Assembly (NCBI GenBank): GCA_907165135.1
Contig: OU015566.1
Location: 7,626,001-7,690,000 of the forward strand
DNA from: Oikopleura dioica
Lineage: Eukaryota; Animalia; Chordata
DNA: 64,000 bases
Reading direction: 5' to 3'
The first letter of the stretch is position 1. Every line of letters starts with the position of its first letter. This document shows, one piece after another, positions 13,628-25,235 of this stretch. The notes under the pieces are model-generated. The model was not told where the DNA came from, did no database searches, and saw only the letters and a program-made list of their open reading frames with translations. The position numbers and the translations under genes are program-made.

Positions 13628-15549
13628 CTATTCTTTCGAGGTCTCCTCTCCGTCGATTTTGACTGAATCAATCTGCTTCTTCAAAATTTCATTGTCGAGT
13701 TTGCTTTCCATGTTGTACAACCGCTGCTCGAGAATTGCCACGGTTTGGGTGAGGACGTCCATTTGACGGACCATTTCTTGCATTACTTTTTCGACGTTAG
13801 GAGGTAGCTTTTGATCTTCGAGTGCATGTGCGATGTTTTCTTGTGTAGAATTTAACTGAAATATGATTGTATTCACGAGTAAATTTTGAAAACATGCTAA
13901 TAGTTTTAATAGACTGATTTTTATTGTCAAGGAAAATTTTATTGTTTTCGGGAAAGAGGGTCTTGATAAAGATCTATATTTTACGAAATAGGTCGATAAG
14001 AAATTTTGATAGAAGATCATTATCAATAGTCTTAACAGATGGTTACGGGCTATATTTAGTGGGTCTGTGTTGCTAGAACTCATTCGTTACGAAAATGTAG
14101 CACCAGTAGAACTAGCACCTGTGTCAAGTACACATTTATCTTGTGTTTGTTTTTTTTTCTTCAAAATAAATACCAATTTAATATAGTCATATAGTTTTTT
14201 TTAAAGATTCTCACCTGAGGATCAGGCAAACTGCCAGCTATCGGTGGCCCGAGAGTCCTAACTTCAGGTGTATTTGTCTGTTCGCTAAGAGCTTTTCTAC
14301 TTCGAAGACCAGTCGCTGTCGCAGGTCTACTACCAGGACGAGCAGAGCCAGGGCGCGCTGTACTCGGCCGACTGATGCTCTTTTTCTTTGGCTTTTTCTC
14401 AGGTTCCTCTTCTTCGGGAGAATCAAAATTTGTTTTCCAAACGATAACTTGCTCATCCTATAACCAACTTTTTTCTCAAGAAAATGAGACGAAATGGCTA
14501 CCTGTCCACCAGAGGCAAAACGAGTTCCATCTTGAGCAAACGCTACTGAATTTACTTGACCACTGTGTCCATGAAGAGTGTAACACATGCGGCCTTCCAT
14601 AATATCCAAAACTTTAAGTGTTCCGTCGTTTGAGCCTGTGAGAATCCAGCTTCCACTTGGATGAAATGCTAATTGATTGACTGGTCCTGAATGTACCTAG
14701 AAATAAAGACGATGAGTCCTAGTCGATTTCAAGAAGGGAATTTCTTACTGTGTAATGTTGAAGAAGCTTATTTGTTCTAATATCCCATATTCTCGTTGAT
14801 CTATCATCGCCACACGCGGCTATGCAATTTCCACTTGGATGAAATCTAAAATAGTCCGTGGTAAAGATTTTTTTGAGAATTTCAAGCAGACCTGACGCAA
14901 TTTATTTGACCAGCGCTTTCGAGAAATTCAGCAATATTGTTTTTGTTTCTCAGATCCCAGAGTTTTACGACTTTATCATCACCACCAGACACGGCTAGTC
15001 GGGAGTCCGGACTTAGCCTGACTGATCTGACCCAATTTGTGTGTCCTGTGAGGGAGAATTTGAATTGTTGTCTGTTAACTTCCCAGAGTTTTACTGTTTT
15101 ATCATCACTACAAAATCCTTAGAAAAAAAGTCTAAAAGAAGAGGCCTACCTGCAGGTAATAATTTGTGAACAATCATCAGAGAAATTGATTCCTCTAACA
15201 GCCGCCGTATGTGCCTTGAAGGGTGTCGATTCTCCTTTCACAGACGGTATCCAAAGTCTGACTGTTTTATCTGATGATGCTGTAGCGATAATCTGCCCTG
15301 TTGATGAAAATTCAACATCGTTGATTGCCTCTTTGTGGCCCAAAAATCTGTACGCACGAGCTGACTGTCTAAAATTCCACACCATGAGTTCTCCATCTGC
15401 CGATCCCGTTGCCGCCTAAAATCGAGTTATTCCTAATCAAGAAACTGTCCAATTACCTGTTTTAAATTTGGATTGAATGCGACGCATTTGACAGCATCTT
15501 TGTGCCCTTTATAGTGATGCTCCACAATCGGATCACCCCCTGCGCCCAT
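13628..15549 (-). CDS. POC1: POC1 centriolar WD40 protein
   Basis: [15 protein letters not shown]..., AYRFLGHK...[27 protein letters not shown]...[14 protein letters not shown], and the C-terminal Poc1 coiled coil ([16 protein letters not shown]). Confidence 0.93.
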
Positions 15550-15629
15550 TCTAAAATATTCCGTTTCAATTTTGTTTAGGGAGCAGTAGGTGCATTGAAA
15601 AGTAGTTATAGTTAGGTAAATTATCCTAT

Positions 15630-15846
15630 TTATTTGCCAGCAGCTTTCGCCGCCTTGGCCATTGCTAGTTTTTTCGCCTTCATGGCTTCTGCCAGCTCTT
15701 TGAATCGCAACATGCATTCTCTTTTTGATCTGGAGCCGACCTGCAAAGCGCAAGAGTAAAAATAATTCTAGAGACAAATTTTTCTTACCGCGGAGGCGAT
15801 TTTTTCCCATCTTTCTGGCTCCTTCGCTCCATATGTTCTCAGAGCT
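15630..15846 (-). CDS. DNAJC2: DNAJC2 3' remainder (second SANT domain) downstream of the transposon
   Basis: LRTYGAKEPERWEKIASA|VGSRSKRECMLRFKELAEAMKAKK...GK*, with a 48 nt GT-AG intron. It continues the sequence ...WAQDEQKRLEQALR that breaks at 22947. Confidence 0.92.
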
Positions 15847-15940
15847 GAGTAGGGCCCATTAGGTGTAAATACCCATTAGGTGTAAATTCCATTAGGTGTA
15901 ATTTTCTAGAAGGTGTAACACACCTAATGGATATTTACAC

Positions 15941-16819
15941 CTAATGGGAACTTACACCTATTGGGTGAAAATTCTTTGTTTTGGGACATTTGGTGTAAAT
16001 TGTTGCCGAATTCATTTCTTTCGATCGAAAAAACTCTGCGAAATCCGACTGCTGACGAGAAAATACAAAGAAAAACAAGAAAAAAAACCTTGATCTGCCT
16101 GAATATAAATAATACGAATAAAAGAGATTCTCAATAAAACCGGTCAAGAAGGAAGCTCTTTGATAATATCGTCCTTGAAGCCTCTTTATTTTTATAAAAT
16201 GAAACGACTTCTGCAGGAACCAAAGCATCGGACTTGAATTTACTTGCTCCATCAAAATCTTTTTCATCGAACTTTTTCTTTGGAAGCGAGCTCTGCGTTT
16301 GATTCGTTTATACAAGCCGATCATAATGCCTTTACACAGTTTTTGAATACTTCCCTCTAAATAATTGACAACAGAAGGAAATTCGTCACGAAGTAGGACA
16401 GTACCTGATTTGTACTTTTCGATGAAGAGACAAATCTCATGAATGAATCCTAACGAGCCAATAGTTGCAATCGACTTTTCCGAGTTAAGCTGCGACAGGA
16501 TAATCATCGACTCGTTAACGACATCTTTACATTTTGACGTGCGCACAATACTGTACAAAGGTCGTAGTAGTTCTGAAGTGACGCAGCCAAATTGGAGCAA
16601 TTTCAGGCACTAAATCACGATCGCGTCGTTTTCTTTGTGACTAAGCATGGTGAGCAGAAGTGGTCGGGAGTTCTGTGTCAGTTTCTCGCTCTTTGTGAAA
16701 AAAGAAATCGCTGTAGCTGCTGAGGAGGACTTGTAGTATTTCTCAAGATATGCCATCGAATCTTTGAGGTTGAGGTCTGCTTTCGGAGCTGGTACTTTCG
16801 TATTCATTGAGATCTTCAT
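15941..16819 (-). pseudogene. MULE-internal orphan ORF (helical, possibly ARM/HEAT-like) interrupted by one TAG
   Basis: ORFs 16610-16819 and 15941-16600 are in the same frame, separated only by TAG at 16612-16610. The frame runs into the left TIR. Confidence 0.5.
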
Positions 16820-16989
16820 CCATTTGCAGCTGCGTTGTCGTTTTGCTTAAAACACTGTTATACAATTATATTGACTATATGAATTTGAATTCTAGTGCTT
16901 CTAGAACTTAAGTCTACAGATATTTTCATAAAAATTGAACATTTACTTCTCGATTTTCTGCAGGAGTCTACTTATTATTAGAGATAAAA

Positions 16990-19790
16990 ATGAAGCGTAA
17001 AAAGGATGATGAAAAGAATGAGGATTTGGAATTAACAAAAGAAGTCAGCGACATGGTTAAGAAAGCGCCAAAAGCTAAACTTGAGCTCAAAGACTTGCTT
17101 ACGCCTGAACGTCCCCCAACGATGATTGAAACTCAAGAAATCATCGATGATTCTACCAGTACCGATCCAAAGGAAAAGTGCTCTTTATTAATAATTGAAT
17201 TACCTTGCAATTTGTCGTAAGGATAAACTTCCAAGTAGCCTCGGTCAGAAATGAGCAACCCTTTCGCGGAGAACTCTTCATCATCAAATTGAAATCTTGA
17301 GAGCACTAAATAGTTGATATCAGTTCAATTGGCAACAAGCATGGTCAATTTCATTTTCTTTATTTGCTTTGGACCTAATGAATTGTTCTCATATACTCCG
17401 CGCAATAAAGACGATTTTCAAGATCTTCCAAAAGAACTAGCAGCAAAATATCCAGGAGCAGGTCAAATAGAATGATTTACCCTTTAATATATACGGCATG
17501 CATCTTTAGGGCATTAACTTACCTAAAACGCTTCTCAATCGAGTAAATCATGTTGTGGACATCGCTTTGGCACTGTTGCTTGCCAAAATGCTGGAATTGT
17601 GACGGTTTTTTCGTGCGCTGAAATCAAAAATTATCATTTTGAGATCTGTTAAAAAGGATGGAAAAGAATGAATCTCAACTGTCAAAACCACCACGTTCGA
17701 AAGAATCTGGAAACATCTAACTGTAAAGCGAAAATATCGGTGCTTGTACGAAATTCTGATTACAAATCGAAAGAATTTTACGATGTTGAAAACTTTATAA
17801 TCTACGATCCAAGAAAATCTCATGTGGCGTTTGAAGTTTGTGGCTTTGGTGGTCATTTGAATGCACTGATTGATTGTTGGAAAAGATATGTGGTTTACAG
17901 ATTCCGTCGAAACGAGCTTGAATCACAGCCCCGGACTTCGAGAAAAATGCTTGAATTGTTGCAAGATGAAGTCGTTGACAGTGAAATTTCAAATCGAATT
18001 TTCGGTGGAAATGCCAAAAAGAATGCCAAAAAAGCGGCGCTTCGATTTAAAAACTCAAATGTCGCTGCCAAGGAAAAACAAATTGTGCCGACAAAATGCC
18101 ACTTCTTATATATGTTTCAACGATGGTGGGCGGATTCACGACTCCCTTCCCTTAGCAACGATTTCACGCGCCACAATATAGTGTTTTTTTTGGACCATGA
18201 CGCTCGCCGAAGTGAATATGCATCAAGTCTCAATATAGGAAGAGTTTTTTACCTTTATTGAGTACAGTTGAGTTGTTGTTATTGTAGATGAGACAGGTTG
18301 TTTGTGAGTTCGCTCGTGATCTGAAAAAAAATATGAAACTCGAAAAGATGGAATAATGAGTGTCGTGAGTGCCGTCAAAAAACAGTGGCCACAACTTGTG
18401 ATGGTAACCGAACCTTGCCGCGATCAATCGAACAAATTCAAGGTCGGGTTTTTTTTATTTAAGTCGCTTGGTGTCGCTTATTCGGGCTTTTGTTTTCGGG
18501 GTAATCATCAAAAATCGACGGTGCGTTAAAAAACCTGTCAAGGGTTATTGCGTTGACCGAATGACTTGTCTCCTCAAAGATCACAAAGCGGAAACATATG
18601 AAGCGTTATGGGCATTCTTCAAAAGCCAAACGAATGGGCTCCCTAATCTTCGCTATGTGTGCAGTGACTGGGAGAAATCCTTTATCTCTGCTCACAAAAC
18701 TGTCCTGCCCGGCGTTATTCATATAAAGTGTTCCTTCCACTTGTATCAATCCTGGAAACGCCGGGCAGGACAGGAAGGCCTCTTGAAGGCTTGGGAGGAA
18801 GAACGGACACAAGTCATCAGGAAGGTTTTATAAAATGAGATTGCTAACATTTGCTATTTTACCTTTGATCTTTTAGCATCAGCTGATTTGTAGATAAGTT
18901 TCCGCTCTCCGACTCGCTTGAGGTTTCGGTTGCCATTCGGGCAAATCTTCTGCGGAAGATGAATTTTTTCTGACTGAGCTTCAAAATGAAGAATACACAG
19001 GCGCTTTTGGTCTTCATTGGAGGTGTGTATTGATAACTGTGCGCTTAGAATGGGTATTATTTGAAATCAATTAAAAATCGTCCACAAAATCAAATTCTGA
19101 CGTATTTTCGTACCTTGGCAAATAGTATCGATGAACTTGATTTTTTTTGTTGCTAGTTTGCGCTCTTGGTTGACTTAATAAAGGACTTGTAGTTTTGCTC
19201 AGCTTTTTCTTTTCTCCGGCTTTGAGGACTTCCTCGATGTTCAGATTGACATCGAGAGCTCCTGTGCATTCGCCAGCGAAGATCTTTCTCGCTCCGTGAC
19301 GGATCATGTTCAACATTTCCTTTTGATTGAGCTTCTTGTTCTGATCTATTGATCATCGTTGAGGGTTTCTAAAAGGGGGATTAGTATTGTGAAAGTCAGT
19401 TAATTTCATTTTATAAAATCAATAAGGAATTGTCTGTATTCTGCGCCTTATTTCCCTGTTGGACAAGATGAATTTCGGGCTGTTTTCATCGAAATCATCA
19501 CAGAAGAGTGCCAAAAAAATCTTGAAATCGACGGTAATGCTGTTGAGTCGATGGATGTTGATGACGAAAACGCGAAAAAAGAGGTGGATGTTGATGATGA
19601 CGAAAACGCGAAAGAAAAGGTGGATGTTGATGACGGCGAAAAGAAGAAAAAGAAGAATGGATGGATCGCTTATCGCGACTACCTCCTCAAGAACTATTTC
19701 AACGAAGACGCCACATTCAAGCCTAGTGAATGGGCCGATAAATCATCCAATATGATCAAAACTGGGGAAATCGATAGCACTAATAACGCC
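16990..19790 (+). CDS. MULE (Mutator) DDE transposase, multi-exon
   Basis: Motifs in the expected order: C-x-C-H zinc-finger-like region (NCQ...NCKAKI...GGH), TCDGNRTLP..IEQI (first D), YVCSDWEKSF..A...LPG...KCSFHLYQSW (second D and CxxH), APYFP, YLLKNYF...W, and STNNA. Exon joins are only partly resolved. Confidence 0.8.
19190..19350 (-). pseudogene. Captured ISWI (SMARCA5/SMARCA1-like) gene fragment
   Basis: IDQNKKLNQKEMLNMIRHGARKIFAG...IEEVLKAGEKK, then (frameshift) AEQN. This resembles ISWI [27 protein letters not shown]...IDGILERGAKKTAEMN. Confidence 0.65.
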
Positions 19791-19827
19791 AGGCTTGGTT
19801 TGATCATTTTTACCTAAATTTTTCTCC

Positions 19828-21415
19828 ATGATTTCGACCACGGTCTCTCTATTTTTATTCGAATTGAGCAGCGCTTCTCATCAGCTTCATGACCAGCGAC
19901 AACAACAGCTTGACTCGTTTCTAAAATATCAATTAACTTTTGAAATCAACGATGAACCAAGATTTAGCGAGAGTGTAAATGCACGACTCTTGCGCGGTCT
20001 GCAGTCTAAGCCTGATGTTCAAGAGCTTTGCAAAGTGATCACAAATCGCAAGAAAACGACGTTTAACGATGAGTTGAGCTATCTTGAAGATGGAAAATGG
20101 CCAATAAAAACAACGCAAAAAACTGGTACAACATGGATGGTTAAATTTAACGCTATGCAACGATTCTATCGAAAGTTGGATCGACAGTCTTCTTCCATGC
20201 CTCTAAAAATAAGCCATGCTGAGCTGAAAAAGCTTGTAATATCGACTTCAAAAGATCTAAAAGGGGCGTCGACCGAGGCAAAAAGATTACTCTCTTCAAA
20301 AGACGCACTTGACAAGTTCCTTTGTGACCTGGATCGCAGAAATCCAGTGTTTGAGACTTTTCTCGCTGGAATGAATTTCAATTTGGTCGAAAAGAAAGAA
20401 GAAAACGCAAAAAAGAAAAAGGGCTCACCTGGTCATGAAATCAACGAAGAGAACCTTCCAGCAATGGGCGAGCATAGCGGCGCCTTTGTGAGGAAAACAG
20501 ATGAAATCAAGGAAGAAAAGCGTCGTATTGATGTCCTTGAAGAAGCCGCGGAATACACAGAAGTTAAGACAGCAACAAACAACGATGAATCGTCCAATTC
20601 CATTCTTCTTGAGGAATCTGAAAATGCAATGAAATACGAAAACGAGCTTGATAGAAAAATGTTCAAAACTCCAACTTTCAAGTTTGAAAAGTTTAATGGC
20701 TACAAGATGTCATTTGAAGCAGAAAATATCGCTAAAAATATACAAAAATGGCCTGAAGGACAGCTGGTCAATTTAATAGAAAAGGAGGAAGTTCGCGTCC
20801 GAGATCTGTTGCCACTTTACAAACTTCGAACAGAAACAAAAGACAAAATTCTGGACTTGTTTATCATCATTATGAGACATTACCAACAGCAACACCAAAC
20901 TAATGATATTATTCTTGAAGACACGAAATTCTCACAAATGGTCTTTCAAGGAAAAAATTTTGCTGGTACTGGTTATCATCCATCAGAAATAAAACGATTT
21001 GTTTGCCCTGTCTTTATCCCTGGTCGAGTTGGACACTGGATAATTGTCAAGGCGGATAGAGAGGAAAAAATATTTACAATTTACGACTCTTTGAATTTCG
21101 AAGATTATGGAGATGTCTATCAAGGCAAATTTCAAAAAATATTAGATTAATTAACCGTATCATAAGCGCAATTGGAAATTTAATTAAGTGTTTCTTGAAG
21201 TATTCGAAGAAGACGAAAAGGACTGGGCTCCTATATATCAAAAATGCCCAAAACAAAAATACATGGACTGCGGCATTAATGTGGCGTATGGATTATTTTT
21301 CATCGTGTGCCTAAATCTGGAGAACTATTCAACAAAACTCAAGGAGAGCTCCAAAAATTTACGACTAAATTTGGCAGCGTGCATATCCACTGGCGAATTA
21401 ATGATTGGTACCTGA
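19828..21415 (+). CDS. C-terminal part of the MULE gene with an Ulp1/SENP-like (C48) cysteine protease domain
   Basis: PVFIPGRVGHWIIV...TIYDSL (His, Asp) and CPKQKYMDCG (Gln, Cys), joined across a short intron, probably GC-AG at 21125-21188. Confidence 0.82.
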
Positions 21416-21495
21416 TGTTTGGCGAACCAGCTGTAAGATTTTACTTTCCAGTACTTCTTTTTCTTAAATAAACATAATCAGAAACAGAGATTTAT

Positions 21496-22348
21496 TCAGT
21501 TATTTACTTTCGAGTACAAAAGCGTATCGCTGAGCCCCTCAACCGCAACTGCGAGGCGTTGATTATGCCAGGACATTTGGAGGACGTCGCCTTCGAAGCC
21601 TTCGATTTCGCGAGCTTCTTCGTCCGGGCCCATGATTCCTTCGAAAGACGCGATGAAGATCTAAAATGAGGGTGAGAAATCGTAAACATGGACGGAGCAC
21701 TTGCCTTGTTTTTGATGGCGAAAATGATCTTTTGATCGTCATGTGACCAACAGACGTTCAAAGCAGGGCCTTCCAAATTGCACCAGGTTCCTTCATTTGT
21801 CCAGGTTACGCAGCTGAAAGAACAGTTTATTGGTCATAAATTGAGCGCAGTTTTACCTAAAAATGGCGATAGAATCGCTTTCAGAAACGACCAGTTTCTC
21901 TCCCGAGTTACTAAATCCGACGAAGGCAACACAACTTGTCCAACTTGTCGCTGAACGAGTTCTTCTCGATCCGAGTCCCAGATTTAGACAAAAGTCGCGT
22001 TCTTCGAACTCAGCGCCAGAAGCGAGCTGAACGGGTCCCAAGAAAGCGAGTGGATCGGCTTCAAAACTTTGCCAAAAAAGGTCGACATTTTCCGCGAAGG
22101 AAAGTTCTTCGTGACAGACGTTCGTGCTCTCGAGGAATTGGTCATCAGCGCCGCCTGGATTTCGCGTTCGACGCTAGAATTTTACAATTTATTTTCAAAA
22201 ATCCCTTCTAAAAGATTACCTCAAGTTCATGAGTCAGCGGTCGAGGGAGATTCTCAACGATTTGATGAACTGGTCTTCCTTTTTCTGCGAATATTAACTT
22301 TCCTCTTGATTCGGAGTAGCATCTCTCTTCTGCTCCTGGACTCATCAT
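21496..22348 (-). CDS. Captured, internally deleted Aladin (AAAS)-like WD40 gene
   Basis: Four exons (22348-22220, 22173-21857, 21813-21705, 21660-21496) with 43-46 nt introns give an open frame of 239 aa. VAFVGFSNSGEKLVV...WTNEGTWCNLEGPALNVCWSHDDQKIIF...QMSWHNQRLAVAVEG is collinear with Aladin WD repeats. AATAAA lies at the stop codon. Confidence 0.6.
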
Positions 22349-22946
22349 TTTTCAGCCGGGCTGTTTTCATTAAGCTTCAATTCTTCTTCTCTTTTGTGAA
22401 TATACATTTGATCATCTATCTGTAATCAAAAAAGGTACCATTAAAGGTCCTACGGGTTAGTTTTAAATATAAAAATTTATCAGAAAAAATTGCAGGAAAT
22501 AGATTAAACTTCAGCTAAATAAACGTCGGCAAGAAAACATATTTCGCAGAAAGATTTCTCGTTTGAAAAAAGAAAGAAAAATGATAATTCATTGAGCGCA
22601 AATGACGAAACGCTTCAGCTTGTCACGATTACTCATCGATAGCGCGCGATTTTCAAATTTTGACTTCGAAAATTGCTCGAAAAGATGTTTTTTGTTTCTT
22701 GAGTGCAATTTAGAAAGAATTAAAAAAAAATATTTTTCCAAAAAAAAATGCTCGTTGGGGGGTCGTCGAGAATGTGTGACAGCTTGTGTCGATCCCTTTT
22801 TTACAAAATAATTTTGAAAAATATTGAACAATTAGGTGTAAATACCCATTAGGTGTAAATATCTATTAGGTGTGTTACACCTTCTAGAAAATTACACTAA
22901 ATGGGTATTTACACCTAATGGGATTTACACCTAATGGGCCTCACCC

Positions 22947-24769
22947 TCTCAGAGCTTGCTCTAGTCGTTTCTGCTCGTCTTGAGCCCACTGAGCTGGGGC
23001 AGGCTGAAGAAAACATGAGTTCTAGAGATAAAATGGGATTCGTCTAAAACTCACCGCAGCGGCAGTACCAGCGTTTGAAGCAGCAGTGTTTTTCTTTCCA
23101 TCCATGTCGCCCGATTTCTTACTGATATCTTTCTGGAACTGCTTGAAAGCATCCTGTTGTCCTGGAGCTCTCATCGATTGTTTTTCGAGTTCTTTAGCCT
23201 TCTTGAGAATTTGCTTTTCGTCTCGCTCTTTGCTTGCGCCGTGGTCGTTCATCCAGACATTGATGACTCCCCAACGATTAAGCGTTCCAGCGGGGAAGGT
23301 TACCATTGCCTTTGTCAGCAATTGGATATCATCGGTGTTCCAGCCGCCGGAAACTACTGCCGCCTTGACCTTTTCCTGTGCTGATTTTTCAGTGGCGATG
23401 GCGTTTTTCTCCGCTTCAGCAGCTTTGAAATCGACAATTGAGGATCGAACAATGTCTGCTCGAGCACTGACATCTGCTTCGTTCATTTTCTTGTTCAAAT
23501 CCGCCAATTGGACGGCGTTAAACGCTGTGCAGAGATATTCAACATCTTCCATCATTTTCAGTTGCTCTTCGTCCGGGACCCAGTATTTGTCTGATTTCGC
23601 CAGGGCTCGGAACTTCTGTCGCTCTTTTTTGTTCGCTTTGACCTCCGCCTTCGCGATCGCTTTTTTCTCCTCTTCGATCTTTGCCAATCGCTCTTTCTCA
23701 GCATCTTCTTTCGCTTTCTTTTCCGCGGTGATTCTGGCCTGTTGAAGCTCTCTTTCTATCTTCGCTCGCCTAGCTTCTTCTTTTTTCTTTTGCTTCGCTT
23801 CGTCGCGGATTCGTTTTTCTTCGTCGACAAAGCGCTGGATTCGCGGATCGTTGGCGTACGCAAGATCGACGAGTTTCCGGATTCGGGACATTTCTTCCTT
23901 CTTCTTTTTCACACGACCCTGGCGGTTGTATTTTTCAATTGCTCGGCGCTCGTAACGATCTTGCGCTTGCTCTGGGTCTCCTTCGTCTTCCCAGTGGAAG
24001 TCTCGCCACGATTTGAAATCATACCAGTAGTTGTAGAAGCGATCTTTGGGAGGTTCTTTGTGAATAGATAAGAAAATTTGAACACTCGAGAAGCCGCTTG
24101 CGGCTTCGTTGAAGAATAATTAAAGCCGCACAATGCGCTGCTTTTTAGTTTTATACGGAAATTATCGAATCGAAGTGATCAGCGAACCAGGCCTACAGTC
24201 TTTCTATCGTCATCGTCATGTCCGATTGGAACAACTTTCGATCTCTGAAGAGCCCATCTTGCGTTTCTCTCGAAAACAGGGGCAAAAATCCCGTAAAAGT
24301 TTGTCTTCAAATTTGGATCATCCGCTTTTGGAATGGAATTGTTAAATTTGGGATCGACAGAATCAAATGCTCGACGCTTGACGGGGTCGGACAGAATTTC
24401 CGCGCTCTTCGTAATGATCGCGAAGTTTTCTTCGTCCTTTTTCGTCGCTGGGCGACCGAGTTTATCGGGGTGGAACTTGAGGACGAGGGCTTTGTGGACT
24501 TGCTTGATTTGCTTGGCAGTGGCCTTGTATCGGATGTCCTGGAGGCCGAGGATCGCGTAGTGATCGTTTTCCTTCCACTCAGAGGCCTTGACCTTTTCCA
24601 GCTTTACACCAGGCTCAAGTTTTTCAAAGTCGATCTCTTCAGTTTCCTCTTCCTCCTCGATAATTTCATCGGTGCTCTCTTCCTCGATTCCGAAGTTTTC
24701 CTGGAGCCAATTTTCGAAAGCCCAGCCGACCGGCTCGACTTCTTGAAAATCAAGTGGCGGTAATTTCAT
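22947..24769 (-). CDS. DNAJC2: DNAJC2 (MPP11/zuotin-related factor), 5' part
   Basis: EVEPVGWAFE, J domain (DHYAILGL...HPDK), FAPVFERNARW, YANDPRIQRF, first SANT (WNTDDIQLLTKAMVTFPAGTLNRW), and the start of the second SANT. Confidence 0.95.
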
Positions 24770-25235
24770 TCTGAAAAATATTTTCTTGATAAAAATCTGA
24801 TTAGCAGTTTGTTATCATGAGTGATCAAATTCCTCAATTAGATAAAAAAATAGAATATTTTATCTCTTTACTTGATGATTAGCAGGGATTAGTTTTTGAT
24901 AAAGTGACAAGTTCGTGAAATCCTCTCTGAAAAGTCGACTTTCCGAAGCCGCGGGGTACCGTGGGAATGAACCGTGGCAGACGGGGCCAATCGCGCTACG
25001 CGACTCAAAATTTACTTCAGTCGCTTGAAAAGAATAAATTCGCGAAGCGCACAACGGCGCGAATAACGCGCGCCAAAACGAAAAGGAAAAGACAAGACGC
25101 AAGAAATAAGAAAGACTGAAGAAAAAACAACTCAAGGTGATTTTGGCGTCTGTCGCCAAAAATTCATTTTGAGAAATAAGAAGAGGAAGGAAGAAAAATC
25201 GAAATTGAAATTTGGCGAAGAGGAAATTGATAAGA

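What the first reader, a model, noticed from the sequence alone, without database searches (positions are those of the whole stretch)
15630..24769. A 7.1 kb Mutator-like element sits inside a coding exon of DNAJC2
Seen: removing 15847-22956 restores ...WAQDEQKRLEQALRTYGAKEPERWEKIASA..., the second SANT domain. With the element in place the frame reads ...EQALR-G-stop (TGA at 22943-22941). The TSD is perfect and the TIRs nearly identical. Established: DNAJC2/MPP11 is the ribosome-associated J-protein, and its SANT domains are linked to chromatin and developmental roles. Inference: this is a recent segregating allele, a tolerated SANT2 truncation, or an insertion rescued by splicing.
Basis: partly seen in the sequence, partly recalled or inferred. 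Interest (0 to 1): 0.75.

Follow-up and report, generated by a model that had tools for sequence, protein, structure and literature searches.

The report
Young Mutator transposon truncating tunicate DNAJC2
A very recently jumped 7.1-kb Mutator-type transposon sits inside a coding exon of the only DNAJC2 (ribosome chaperone) gene in the Okinawa reference genome of the tunicate Oikopleura dioica, cutting off the last 51 amino acids; it is a real but ordinary young insertion allele, and this assembly cannot show whether it is fixed.

Summary
Window 15847-22946 is a 7,100-bp Mutator-like element (MULE). It has a perfect 10-bp target-site duplication (TCTCAGAGCT) and about 120-bp terminal inverted repeats that are 92% alike, not "nearly identical".

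It lies in exon 3 of DNAJC2 (minus strand). With the element the frame reads ...EQALRG-stop. The two flanks tile exactly over the uninterrupted ...EQALRTYGAKEPERW... of relatives.

The genome is not human. It is Oikopleura dioica OKI2018_I69, chr1. The public annotation (CAG5105335.1, 542 aa) already ends at ...EQALRG. The Bergen ortholog (593 aa) keeps the SANT2/Myb domain.

DNAJC2 and both flanks occur once in the assembly. Two other copies of the element differ from this one by 0 and 1 substitutions in 7.1 kb, so the jump is very recent.

The assembly comes from one male with about 3.6% heterozygosity, and its haplotypes were merged with a tool that by default keeps the longer allele. The best reading is therefore a young, probably segregating allele. 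Its product keeps the chaperone domains and loses SANT2 helices 2-3.

Splicing rescue is possible but unproven. The terminal GTGAG is a good donor, but the first AG gives +10 nt; only the second gives +3 nt.

The parts
24193..24769 (-). DNAJC2 exon 1 (N-terminus, J domain, start of the zuotin homology domain)
   Evidence: ORF and Pfam DnaJ E=4e-14. Matches public protein P0087 residues 1-192. The junction was read.
24044..24192 (-). DNAJC2 intron 1, 149 nt, GC-AG
   Evidence: Sequence together with RKTVDRFY in P0087, P0068 and L005.
23055..24043 (-). DNAJC2 exon 2 (rest of the zuotin homology domain, RAC head, SANT1-like region)
   Evidence: Pfam ZUO1-like_ZHD, RAC_head and Myb_DNA-binding_2. 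tblastn of the L005 protein. Found once in the genome.
23004..23054 (-). DNAJC2 intron 2, 51 nt, GTGAGT...TTCAG
   Evidence: Sequence...TAAAPAPAQW in P0087.
22957..23003 (-). 5' part of DNAJC2 exon 3 (SANT2 helix 1: PAPAQWAQDEQKRLEQ..)
   Evidence: Translation.
22947..22956 (.). Target-site duplication, right copy (TCTCAGAGCT)
22941..22943 (-). Premature TGA stop, made by the element's terminal GGGTGAGG
   Evidence: P0087 ends ...EQALRG.
15847..22946 (+). 7,100-bp Mutator-like element; its transposase genes run antisense to DNAJC2
   Evidence: Ends fixed by three other copies at 99.5-99.9% identity.
15847..15970 (.). Left terminal inverted repeat, with internal 17-nt CCCATTAGGTGTAAATA subrepeats in both orientations
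22823..22946 (.). Right terminal inverted repeat
18408..18830 (+). Exon-like open frame holding the C-terminal two thirds of a MULE transposase domain
   Evidence: Pfam PF10551 E=1.5e-5, 25.8 bits against a cut-off of 27.6, profile positions 31-98 of 99.
19804..21412 (+). Long open frames whose end looks like an Ulp1/CE-clan cysteine protease (HW..D in 19804-21147; Q..DCG in 21188-21412)
   Evidence: Lead level only. Atlas score 0.93 to Peptidase_C48 clusters. Weak match to the CE-clan deubiquitinase ChlaDub2, E=0.3. No Pfam hit.
21507..21833 (-). Backward-facing Aladin-like WD-propeller fragment (probable captured host piece)
   Evidence: Pfam PF25460 E=5e-4, far below the cut-off.
15837..15846 (.). 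Target-site duplication, left copy (TCTCAGAGCT)
15789..15836 (-). 3' part of DNAJC2 exon 3 (TYGAKEPERWEKIASA), now cut off from the gene
15741..15788 (-). DNAJC2 intron 3, 48 nt, GTAAGA...TTGCAG
15630..15740 (-). DNAJC2 last exon (SANT2 helix 3 and basic tail, stop TAA 15632-15630), still intact
   Evidence: near-identical to P0068 and L005.
15457..15549 (-). First exon of the next gene (WD40 repeat protein), 80 nt after the DNAJC2 stop on the same strand
   Evidence: WD40 Pfam hits.

Best explanation
A member of a currently or very recently active Mutator-like transposon family of Oikopleura dioica inserted, with a 10-bp staggered cut, into exon 3 of the single-copy DNAJC2/zuotin gene, in the haplotype kept in the OKI2018_I69 reference.

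The element's terminal GGGTGAGG supplies Gly-stop right after ...EQALR. The locus therefore encodes a 542-aa protein. It keeps the J domain, the zuotin homology domain, the RAC head/middle region, SANT1 and helix 1 of SANT2. It lacks the last 51 residues, which are SANT2 helices 2-3 and the basic tail.

Inferred: the stop lies in what becomes the terminal exon, and AATAAA hexamers follow from 748 nt on, so a stable truncated mRNA is expected. The ribosome-chaperone role should be largely kept. Any SANT2-dependent role would be lost.

Inferred: the allele is young and most likely still segregating, quite possibly heterozygous in the sequenced male. It appears in the reference because the haplotype merge prefers the longer allele.
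For: Real transposition:
- A perfect 10-bp duplication flanks ends that match three other copies base for base.
- The flanks tile exactly over the uninterrupted coding sequence of relatives.

MULE features:
- Target-site duplications are 9 bp at the three other copies and 10 bp at this one.
- The inverted repeats are about 120 bp.
- A PF10551 match is present.

Youth:
- This copy differs from the copy 1.47 Mb away on the same chromosome by 0 substitutions, and from the C5 copy by 1.
- All other differences are 1-nt homopolymer lengths.
- The stranded downstream exons are intact.

Identity of genome and product:
- G000 statistics equal those of OKI2018_I69.
- CAG5105335.1, 'OKI2018_I69.chr1.g2038', 542 aa, lies on a 14,533,022-bp contig and ends ...EQALRG.
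- The Myb/SANT2 Pfam hit is present in the 593-aa Bergen ortholog and absent here.
- There is no second copy of any part of the gene or its flanks.

Segregating allele:
- The assembly comes from one male with about 3.6% heterozygosity, merged by HaploMerger2 into reference and allelic sets (PMC8008620).

Tolerance:
- Human Mpp11 lacking both SANT domains rescues yeast zuo1-delta nearly as well as the full-length protein, and fungi lost the SANT domains (PMC6519820).
Against: - No reads, RNA or second Okinawa-lineage assembly were available. Zygosity, population frequency and the real transcript are therefore untested.
- Polishing of near-identical 7-kb repeats could make copies look more alike than they are.
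- This copy could be the older donor of the others rather than a new daughter.
- The HaploMerger2 settings used for this assembly were not checked.
- The yeast complementation result says nothing about SANT2-dependent roles in an animal.
Confidence: 0.7

Rival explanations
1. Rescue by splicing, that is, a new giant intron. The spliceosome uses the GT at element positions 3-4 (exon ...AGAGG|GTGAGG) as donor and an AG in or beside the far target-site duplication as acceptor. That removes the 7.1-kb element from the DNAJC2 pre-mRNA. With the acceptor CTCTGAG|A the mRNA gains 3 nt and reads ...EQALR-G-TYGAKEPERW....
For: - The donor AGG|GTGAGG resembles the gene's own intron 2 donor GCG|GTGAGT and takes the TGA into the intron.
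- The far end, read on the minus strand, is a 66-nt AG-free stretch with CTAAT branch-like motifs and a CCCTACTC pyrimidine run just before the duplication.
- The gene's own intron 1 is GC-AG with a weak acceptor, so the local machinery tolerates poor sites.
- Long complementary ends could bring the two sites together.
- Transposon-derived introns are documented in larvaceans and other aquatic eukaryotes (PMC11282704, PMC9860276).
- Other notes of this scan report short transposon-made introns in this genome (not checked here).
Against: - The first AG after the AG-free stretch (CCCTACTCAG|C) gives +10 nt and a frameshift. The in-frame result needs the second AG, 7 nt further on.
- 7.1 kb is far above the roughly 50-150-nt introns of this gene.
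- The element carries backward-facing host exons and several AATAAA hexamers on the transcribed strand, which would compete.
- The three other copies show no long open frame running across the insertion site, so they give no sign of exon insertion. There is thus no pattern of intron-like behaviour in the family.
- The public gene model ends at the stop inside the element.
Confidence: 0.12
2. Fixed, tolerated truncation. The insertion is homozygous and common or fixed in the Okinawa lineage or its laboratory culture, and animals live with a DNAJC2 that lacks SANT2.
For: - No empty-site sequence exists anywhere in the assembly.
- SANT domains are dispensable for the ribosomal function in a yeast assay and were lost in fungi.
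- A laboratory culture founded from few animals can fix mildly harmful alleles.
Against: - Divergence between copies is below about 0.04% (95% bound for 0 of 7,100), against about 3.6% allelic divergence. That leaves far too little time for neutral fixation in a large wild population.
- SANT2 is conserved in every relative recovered: P0068, P0003, P0005, P0006, L005-L007.
- A merged haploid assembly cannot show the other allele.
Confidence: 0.15
3. Assembly artefact. The element was placed here by a mis-join at a repeat, and the real locus is uninterrupted.
For: The element is a multi-copy 7-kb repeat with near-identical copies, which assemblers can misplace. The median read length was only 840 bp.
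Against: - A mis-join does not create a perfect 10-bp duplication of unique host sequence at exactly the element's ends, nor an exact restoration of a conserved frame on removal.
- Both flanks are unique in the assembly.
Confidence: 0.03

Closest known systems
Mutator (MuDR/Mu) insertion alleles of maize and other MULE-induced mutations, including the Aedes Muta1 element shown to transpose (PMC5499845)
   Same: Long terminal inverted repeats, 9-10-bp target-site duplications, a MULE-type DDE transposase domain, insertion into a gene, and near-identical copies that indicate current activity.
   Different: The host is a chordate, where MULEs are said to be barely documented (PMC6446971). Transposition was not observed, only inferred from the copies.
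Plant MULEs carrying an Ulp1-like protease (KI-MULE/Kaonashi) and gene-capturing Pack-MULEs (PMC5861414; the Kaonashi comparison is from my own knowledge)
   Same: The element appears to encode an Ulp1/CE-clan protease-like region next to the transposase and carries backward-facing host gene fragments. One copy has 1.8 kb of different cargo at the same internal spot.
   Different: The protease assignment is lead level only: no Pfam hit and E=0.3 to a solved CE-clan enzyme. It is an animal host, and the element still looks autonomous, whereas most Pack-MULEs are not.
Introners and transposon-derived introns (Micromonas, Aureococcus and others; Fritillaria borealis MITE-derived introns; PMC11282704, PMC9860276)
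   Same: The terminal sequence offers a 5' splice site. A pyrimidine-rich far end abuts a target-site duplication that can supply the AG. Complementary ends are present. It is a larvacean host.
   Different: Introners are short non-autonomous elements present in many genes. This is one 7.1-kb gene-carrying copy, the favoured acceptor breaks the frame, and no RNA evidence exists.
Removal of Tc1 from C. elegans pre-mRNAs and of Mu/Ds from maize pre-mRNAs by cryptic splicing (from my own knowledge; papers not read here)
   Same: Exonic DNA-transposon insertions whose ends, together with the flanks, provide cryptic splice sites that can partly restore function.
   Different: Those cases were shown by cDNA; here it is only a sequence-based possibility.
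DNAJC2/MPP11/ZRF1/zuotin family (PMC6519820)
   Same: Domain order J - ZHD - RAC head/middle - SANT1 - SANT2 in the Bergen ortholog. The product of this locus has everything up to SANT2 helix 1.
   Different: This allele ends inside SANT2. It resembles neither the fungal SANT-less form nor a known splice isoform.

Membership tests
Mutator-like elements (MULE/MuDR superfamily) | Target-site duplication of 8-11 bp | tested here: met
   10 bp at this copy and 9 bp at the three other copies. The range is as given in PMC6446971.
Mutator-like elements (MULE/MuDR superfamily) | Long terminal inverted repeats (tens to hundreds of bp) | tested here: met
   About 120 nt, 92% identity, with internal subrepeats.
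Mutator-like elements (MULE/MuDR superfamily) | MURA-type DDE transposase (Pfam PF10551 MULE domain) | tested here: inconclusive
   E=1.5e-5, 25.8 bits against a gathering score of 27.6. Only profile positions 31-98 lie in this exon-like frame. The first third of the domain was not located.
Mutator-like elements (MULE/MuDR superfamily) | Mobility: several copies with the same ends at unrelated sites | tested here: met
   Four full copies on three chromosomes at 99.5-99.9% identity, each with its own duplication.
DNAJC2 / zuotin (MPP11, ZRF1) | J domain plus zuotin homology domain plus RAC head | tested here: met
   On P0087: PF00226 E=9e-14, PF21884 E=3e-36, PF16717 E=2e-6.
DNAJC2 / zuotin (MPP11, ZRF1) | Two C-terminal SANT/Myb domains (animal, plant and protist form) | tested here: not met
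   PF00249 at 527-572 in the Bergen ortholog (E=5.5e-11) and no such hit in the 542-aa product of this locus. The missing part lies intact beyond the element. The gene is a member; this allele's product is a truncated one.
Introner / transposon-derived intron | The element is removed from mRNA by the spliceosome | not testable with these tools
   No RNA data could be reached. Only splice-site likeness was judged by eye.
Introner / transposon-derived intron | Many copies sitting as introns in unrelated genes | tested here: not met
   None of the three other copies has a long open frame running across its insertion site, so none is evidently in coding sequence. The sample is very small.
Ulp1/SENP (peptidase C48, clan CE) domain in the element | Significant match to PF02902 or to a solved CE-clan protease, with the His-Asp-Cys triad | tested here: inconclusive
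   No Pfam hit at E<=5. PDB ChlaDub2 E=0.3 over the HW...D stretch. Atlas 0.93 to C48 clusters. The Q..DCG motif in the next open frame was seen by eye.

The most novel reading that the evidence does not exclude
The element's ends work as splice sites: GT at its third base, and a pyrimidine-rich far tip next to an AG in the target-site duplication. An autonomous, gene-carrying 7.1-kb Mutator transposon would then be removed from DNAJC2 mRNA as a new intron, leaving one extra glycine. That would be intron birth caught at the moment of insertion, in a chordate lineage known for massive intron turnover.
Probability: 0.1. Interest if true: 0.8.

Novelty: new member of a known kind. Interest (0 to 1): 0.4.

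Why it matters
1. It is a warning for users of the reference. The public OKI2018_I69 protein for DNAJC2 (542 aa, no SANT2) reflects a transposon insertion in the assembled haplotype, not the normal gene of the species.

2. It is direct evidence that a Mutator-type transposon has been mutagenic very recently in a chordate, a group in which such elements are said to be barely documented.

3. If carriers can be found in the Okinawa culture, the allele is a ready-made natural SANT2 truncation of the ribosome-associated J-protein. It could separate the chaperone role from SANT-dependent roles in an animal with a 4-day generation time.

4. The same carriers would show whether larvacean spliceosomes can remove a large new transposon.

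5. DNAJC2 may also head a two-gene operon, so the insertion could test polarity on the downstream WD40 gene.

Tried and rejected
- Looking for a called ORF that would span the empty site in another frame, using the 125-aa ORF 15433-15810: no hits. This is uninformative.
- Word search with exon 2: it found no full-length Okinawa-lineage protein other than the truncated public model.
- A home-made intron finder on the window, meant to build splice-site weight matrices: the output was dominated by false candidates. I dropped it and judged the splice sites only by eye against the gene's own three introns.
- Pfam and PDB searches for the Ulp1-like part: nothing significant.
- A nematode origin, my first guess from the short introns: rejected once the assembly statistics and the named protein pointed to Oikopleura.
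- A 9-bp duplication at this copy: rejected, because with the fixed element ends the 9-mers on the two sides differ; only 10 bp fits.
Exons were searched one by one by reference, and the public proteins P0087 and P0068 stood in for the whole protein. Flanks were joined only inside a script, to list open frames.
- The large representative protein search and structure prediction were not used, because nothing rested on them.
Full report
**What is in the sequence**

The left junction reads ...ccatatgt TCTCAGAGCT | GAGTAGGGCCCATTAGG.... The right junction reads ...CCTAATGGGCCTCACCC | TCTCAGAGCT tgctctag....

A search of the window's own assembly with the first 200 bases of the insert found three more full-length copies and one fragment. 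Alignment to those copies fixes the element at 15847-22946, exactly 7,100 bp. The identical 10-bp repeat lies at 15837-15846 and 22947-22956. The three other copies have 9-bp duplications: AAGATAATC, GATACGTTT and TTCTTTTTC. Here only 10 bp fits the fixed ends.

The two ends align over about 120 nt at 92% identity. They contain 17-nt CCCATTAGGTGTAAATA subrepeats in both orientations, so each end is itself partly palindromic. The tips differ at 3 of the first 6 bases (GAGTAGG against GGGTGAG). "TSD perfect" is right.

**The host gene**

On the minus strand, exon 1 (24769-24193) carries the J domain. Exon 2 (24043-23055) carries the rest of the zuotin homology domain, the RAC head and a SANT1-like stretch. 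Exon 3 starts at 23003.

- With the element in place the frame reads PAPAQWAQDEQKRLEQALRG-stop, with TGA at 22943-22941 inside the element's tip.
- Beyond the element, 15845-15789 reads ALRTYGAKEPERWEKIASA.
- After a 48-nt intron, 15740-15630 reads VGSRSKRECMLRFKELAEAMKAKKLAMAKAAKAAGK-stop.

The two flanks overlap by the 10-bp repeat. They tile exactly over the uninterrupted sequence of relatives:
- a degenerate pattern for EQALRTYGAKEP found three JGI metagenome contigs (L005, cDNA-like; L006, genomic; L007; 72-84% nucleotide identity) with one continuous exon;
- proteins P0003, P0005, P0006 and P0068 all read ...EQALRTYG....

I did not send a joined or repaired gene model to any search. Exons were searched one at a time by reference, and public proteins stood in for the whole. 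Flanks were joined only inside a script, to list open frames.

**Which genome**

It is not human. G000 has 64,281,565 bases in 19 contigs, with contigs of 17,092,476 and 16,158,756 bases. The paper on the Okinawa Oikopleura dioica assembly OKI2018_I69 reports 64.3 Mbp, 19 scaffolds, longest 17.1 Mbp, N50 16.2 Mbp and GC 41% (PMC8008620).

The cluster of the 99%-identical fragment P0001 contains CAG5105335.1, named Oidioi.mRNA.OKI2018_I69.chr1.g2038.t1.cds [Oikopleura dioica]. It is 542 aa and lies on a contig of 14,533,022 bases, which is the length of C4. Its sequence equals my exon model and ends ...EQALRG. The public annotation therefore already carries the truncated product, apparently without comment.

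The Bergen-lineage ortholog CBY13801.1 (P0068, 593 aa, 88% identical over exon 2) is intact. Pfam finds Myb_DNA-binding at 527-572 in it (E=5.5e-11) and nothing there in P0087. The intact protein of this lineage would also be 593 aa. The allele loses 51 residues and gains one glycine.

**What the element is**

- An exon-like frame at 18408-18830 matches the MULE transposase domain. The score is E=1.5e-5, 25.8 bits, just under the 27.6-bit cut-off, and covers profile positions 31-98. The genome-wide scan finds the same hit in all four copies and in nine other loci.
- With 9-10-bp duplications and long inverted repeats, this makes a Mutator-like element. The transposase test stays formally below threshold because the gene is split by introns.
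- The end of the long frame 19804-21147 (HWIIVKADREEKIFTIYDS) and the next frame (KQKYMDCGINV) look like an Ulp1/CE-clan protease. Support is weak: Atlas score 0.93 to Peptidase_C48 clusters, E=0.3 to the CE-clan enzyme ChlaDub2 over the His-Asp stretch, and no Pfam hit.
- A backward-facing frame at 21507-21833 weakly matches the Aladin propeller (E=5e-4).
- The C1 copy holds 1,821 extra bases with TPR-like frames at one internal spot, without repeats of its own.

These points agree with earlier notes of this scan, which describe the family elsewhere in this genome as a gene-carrying Mutator element. I used those notes as leads only.

**Age**

In a four-way alignment, this copy and the one 1.47 Mb away on the same chromosome differ by no substitution. 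This copy and the C5 copy differ by one, at 20569. Every other difference among the three is a 1-nt change in an A or T run of five or more, which is typical Nanopore residue. The C1 copy differs by about 24 substitutions.

Zero of 7,100 gives a 95% upper bound of about 0.04% divergence. The same animal's alleles differ by about 3.6%. The last shared template of these copies is thus roughly a hundred times younger than the average allelic coalescence. That is far too young for neutral fixation in a large wild population. The stranded last exons are undamaged.

Caveats: polishing can homogenise repeats, and this copy could be the donor rather than a daughter.

**Fixed or segregating**

All parts of DNAJC2 and both flanks occur once in the assembly. 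There is no second copy and no leftover haplotig with an empty site.

The assembly is a HaploMerger2 merge of the two haplotypes of one male into a "reference" and an "allelic" set. By default that tool puts the longer allele into the reference (PMC10236652). A heterozygous 7.1-kb insertion would thus be expected to end up in the reference.

Together with the age argument, I take a young, probably heterozygous or low-frequency allele as the best reading, at about 0.7.

**Consequence for the protein**

The stop lies 3 nt into the element. If the transcript ends in the element, the stop is in the terminal exon, so nonsense-mediated decay is not expected; this is inference. AATAAA hexamers on the transcribed strand start 748 nt after the stop.

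The product keeps everything needed for the ribosomal role. Human Mpp11 lacking both SANT domains rescues yeast zuo1-delta almost as well as the full-length protein, and fungi lost the SANT domains altogether (PMC6519820). SANT2 is conserved in every relative recovered here, so it is unlikely to be dispensable in the long run.

**Splicing rescue**

Read on the DNAJC2 strand, the junction is ...CTG AGA GG|GTGAGGCCC. This is a donor much like the gene's own GCG|GTGAGT, and it would take the TGA into the intron.

The far end reads ...CTAGAAAATTACACCTAATGGAATTTACACCTAATGGGTATTTACACCTAATGGGCCCTACTC|AGCTCTGAGA|ACATATGG. It has 66 nt without AG, CTAAT branch-like motifs and a short pyrimidine run. 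After these come AG at the first two bases of the duplication and a second AG 7 nt later.

- Donor plus the first AG adds 10 nt and shifts the frame.
- Donor plus the second AG adds 3 nt and gives ...EQALR-G-TYGAKEPERW....

The gene's intron 1 is GC-AG with a weak acceptor. Larvaceans are known for transposon-derived introns and a permissive spliceosome (PMC11282704, PMC13326754). The idea is therefore not absurd.

Several points argue against it:
- the favoured acceptor is out of frame;
- the would-be intron is 50-150 times longer than this gene's introns;
- competing sites and poly(A) signals lie inside;
- the three other copies show no long open frame across their insertion sites, so they are not evidently in coding sequence.

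I give it about 0.1. An earlier first-stage note raised the same idea. I had reached it from the sequence before reading that note, and it is not independent support.

**Other rivals**

An assembly chimera is very unlikely, because a mis-join does not make a perfect duplication of unique host sequence at the exact element ends. A fixed, tolerated truncation remains possible, about 0.15, especially in a bottlenecked culture.

**Side observation**

The DNAJC2 stop overlaps an AATAAA. It lies 80 nt before the ATG of a WD40-repeat gene on the same strand. Both genes have a TTT(T)(C)AG|A acceptor-like site one base before the ATG. In O. dioica a single spliced leader resolves operons with short intercistronic distances: median 31 bp, manual cut-off 60 bp (PMC7986045). 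If these two genes are co-transcribed, the insertion may also affect the downstream gene. This is untested.

**Verdict**

This is a real, very young Mutator-like insertion that truncates the only DNAJC2 gene in the assembled haplotype. It is an ordinary kind of event: a transposon insertion allele. It has three points of interest. It corrects the reading of a public gene model. It documents mutagenic MULE activity in a chordate, where a survey found almost none (PMC6446971). And it offers a natural allele for testing SANT2 function and transposon splicing. The element family itself had already been found by this scan on other DNA of this genome.

Noticed in passing
window 24044-24192 (minus strand): DNAJC2 intron 1 is a 149-nt GC-AG intron with a purine-rich acceptor (CTCCCAAAG|A). 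It is an example of the non-canonical introns reported for this species.
   Followed up: partly
window 15547-15632 and 24767-24790 (minus strand): The DNAJC2 stop (with AATAAA overlapping it) lies 80 nt upstream of the ATG of a WD40-repeat gene on the same strand. Both ATGs are preceded by a TTTTAG|A or TTTTTCAG|A acceptor-like site. This may be a spliced-leader operon that the 7.1-kb element now splits.
   Followed up: partly
L002:4239-6059 (G000 C1, about 16.973-16.975 Mb): The C1 copy of the element has 1,821 extra bases at the position matching window 19204. They have no inverted repeats or duplication and contain TPR-like open frames, so different cargo sits at the same internal spot.
   Followed up: partly
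G000 contig C3 (2.9 Mb): 1606193, 1941751, 2065052, 2192297; also L004: Four of the 13 MULE-domain hits in the genome, plus a fragment of this element's inverted repeat, lie on the small 2.9-Mb contig C3. That is an over-representation for 4.5% of the genome.
   Followed up: no
window 18527, 20117, 21064 and other A/T runs inside the element: The copies differ by 1-nt homopolymer lengths that open or close reading frames; for example the MULE-domain frame is 141 aa in two copies and 109 aa in two others. These are probably residual Nanopore errors, so coding intactness of single copies cannot be judged from this assembly.
   Followed up: partly
G000 C4:9114597-9121697 (L001) against window 15847-22946: The two copies with no substitution between them lie 1.47 Mb apart on the same chromosome, which suggests a local hop.
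   Followed up: no
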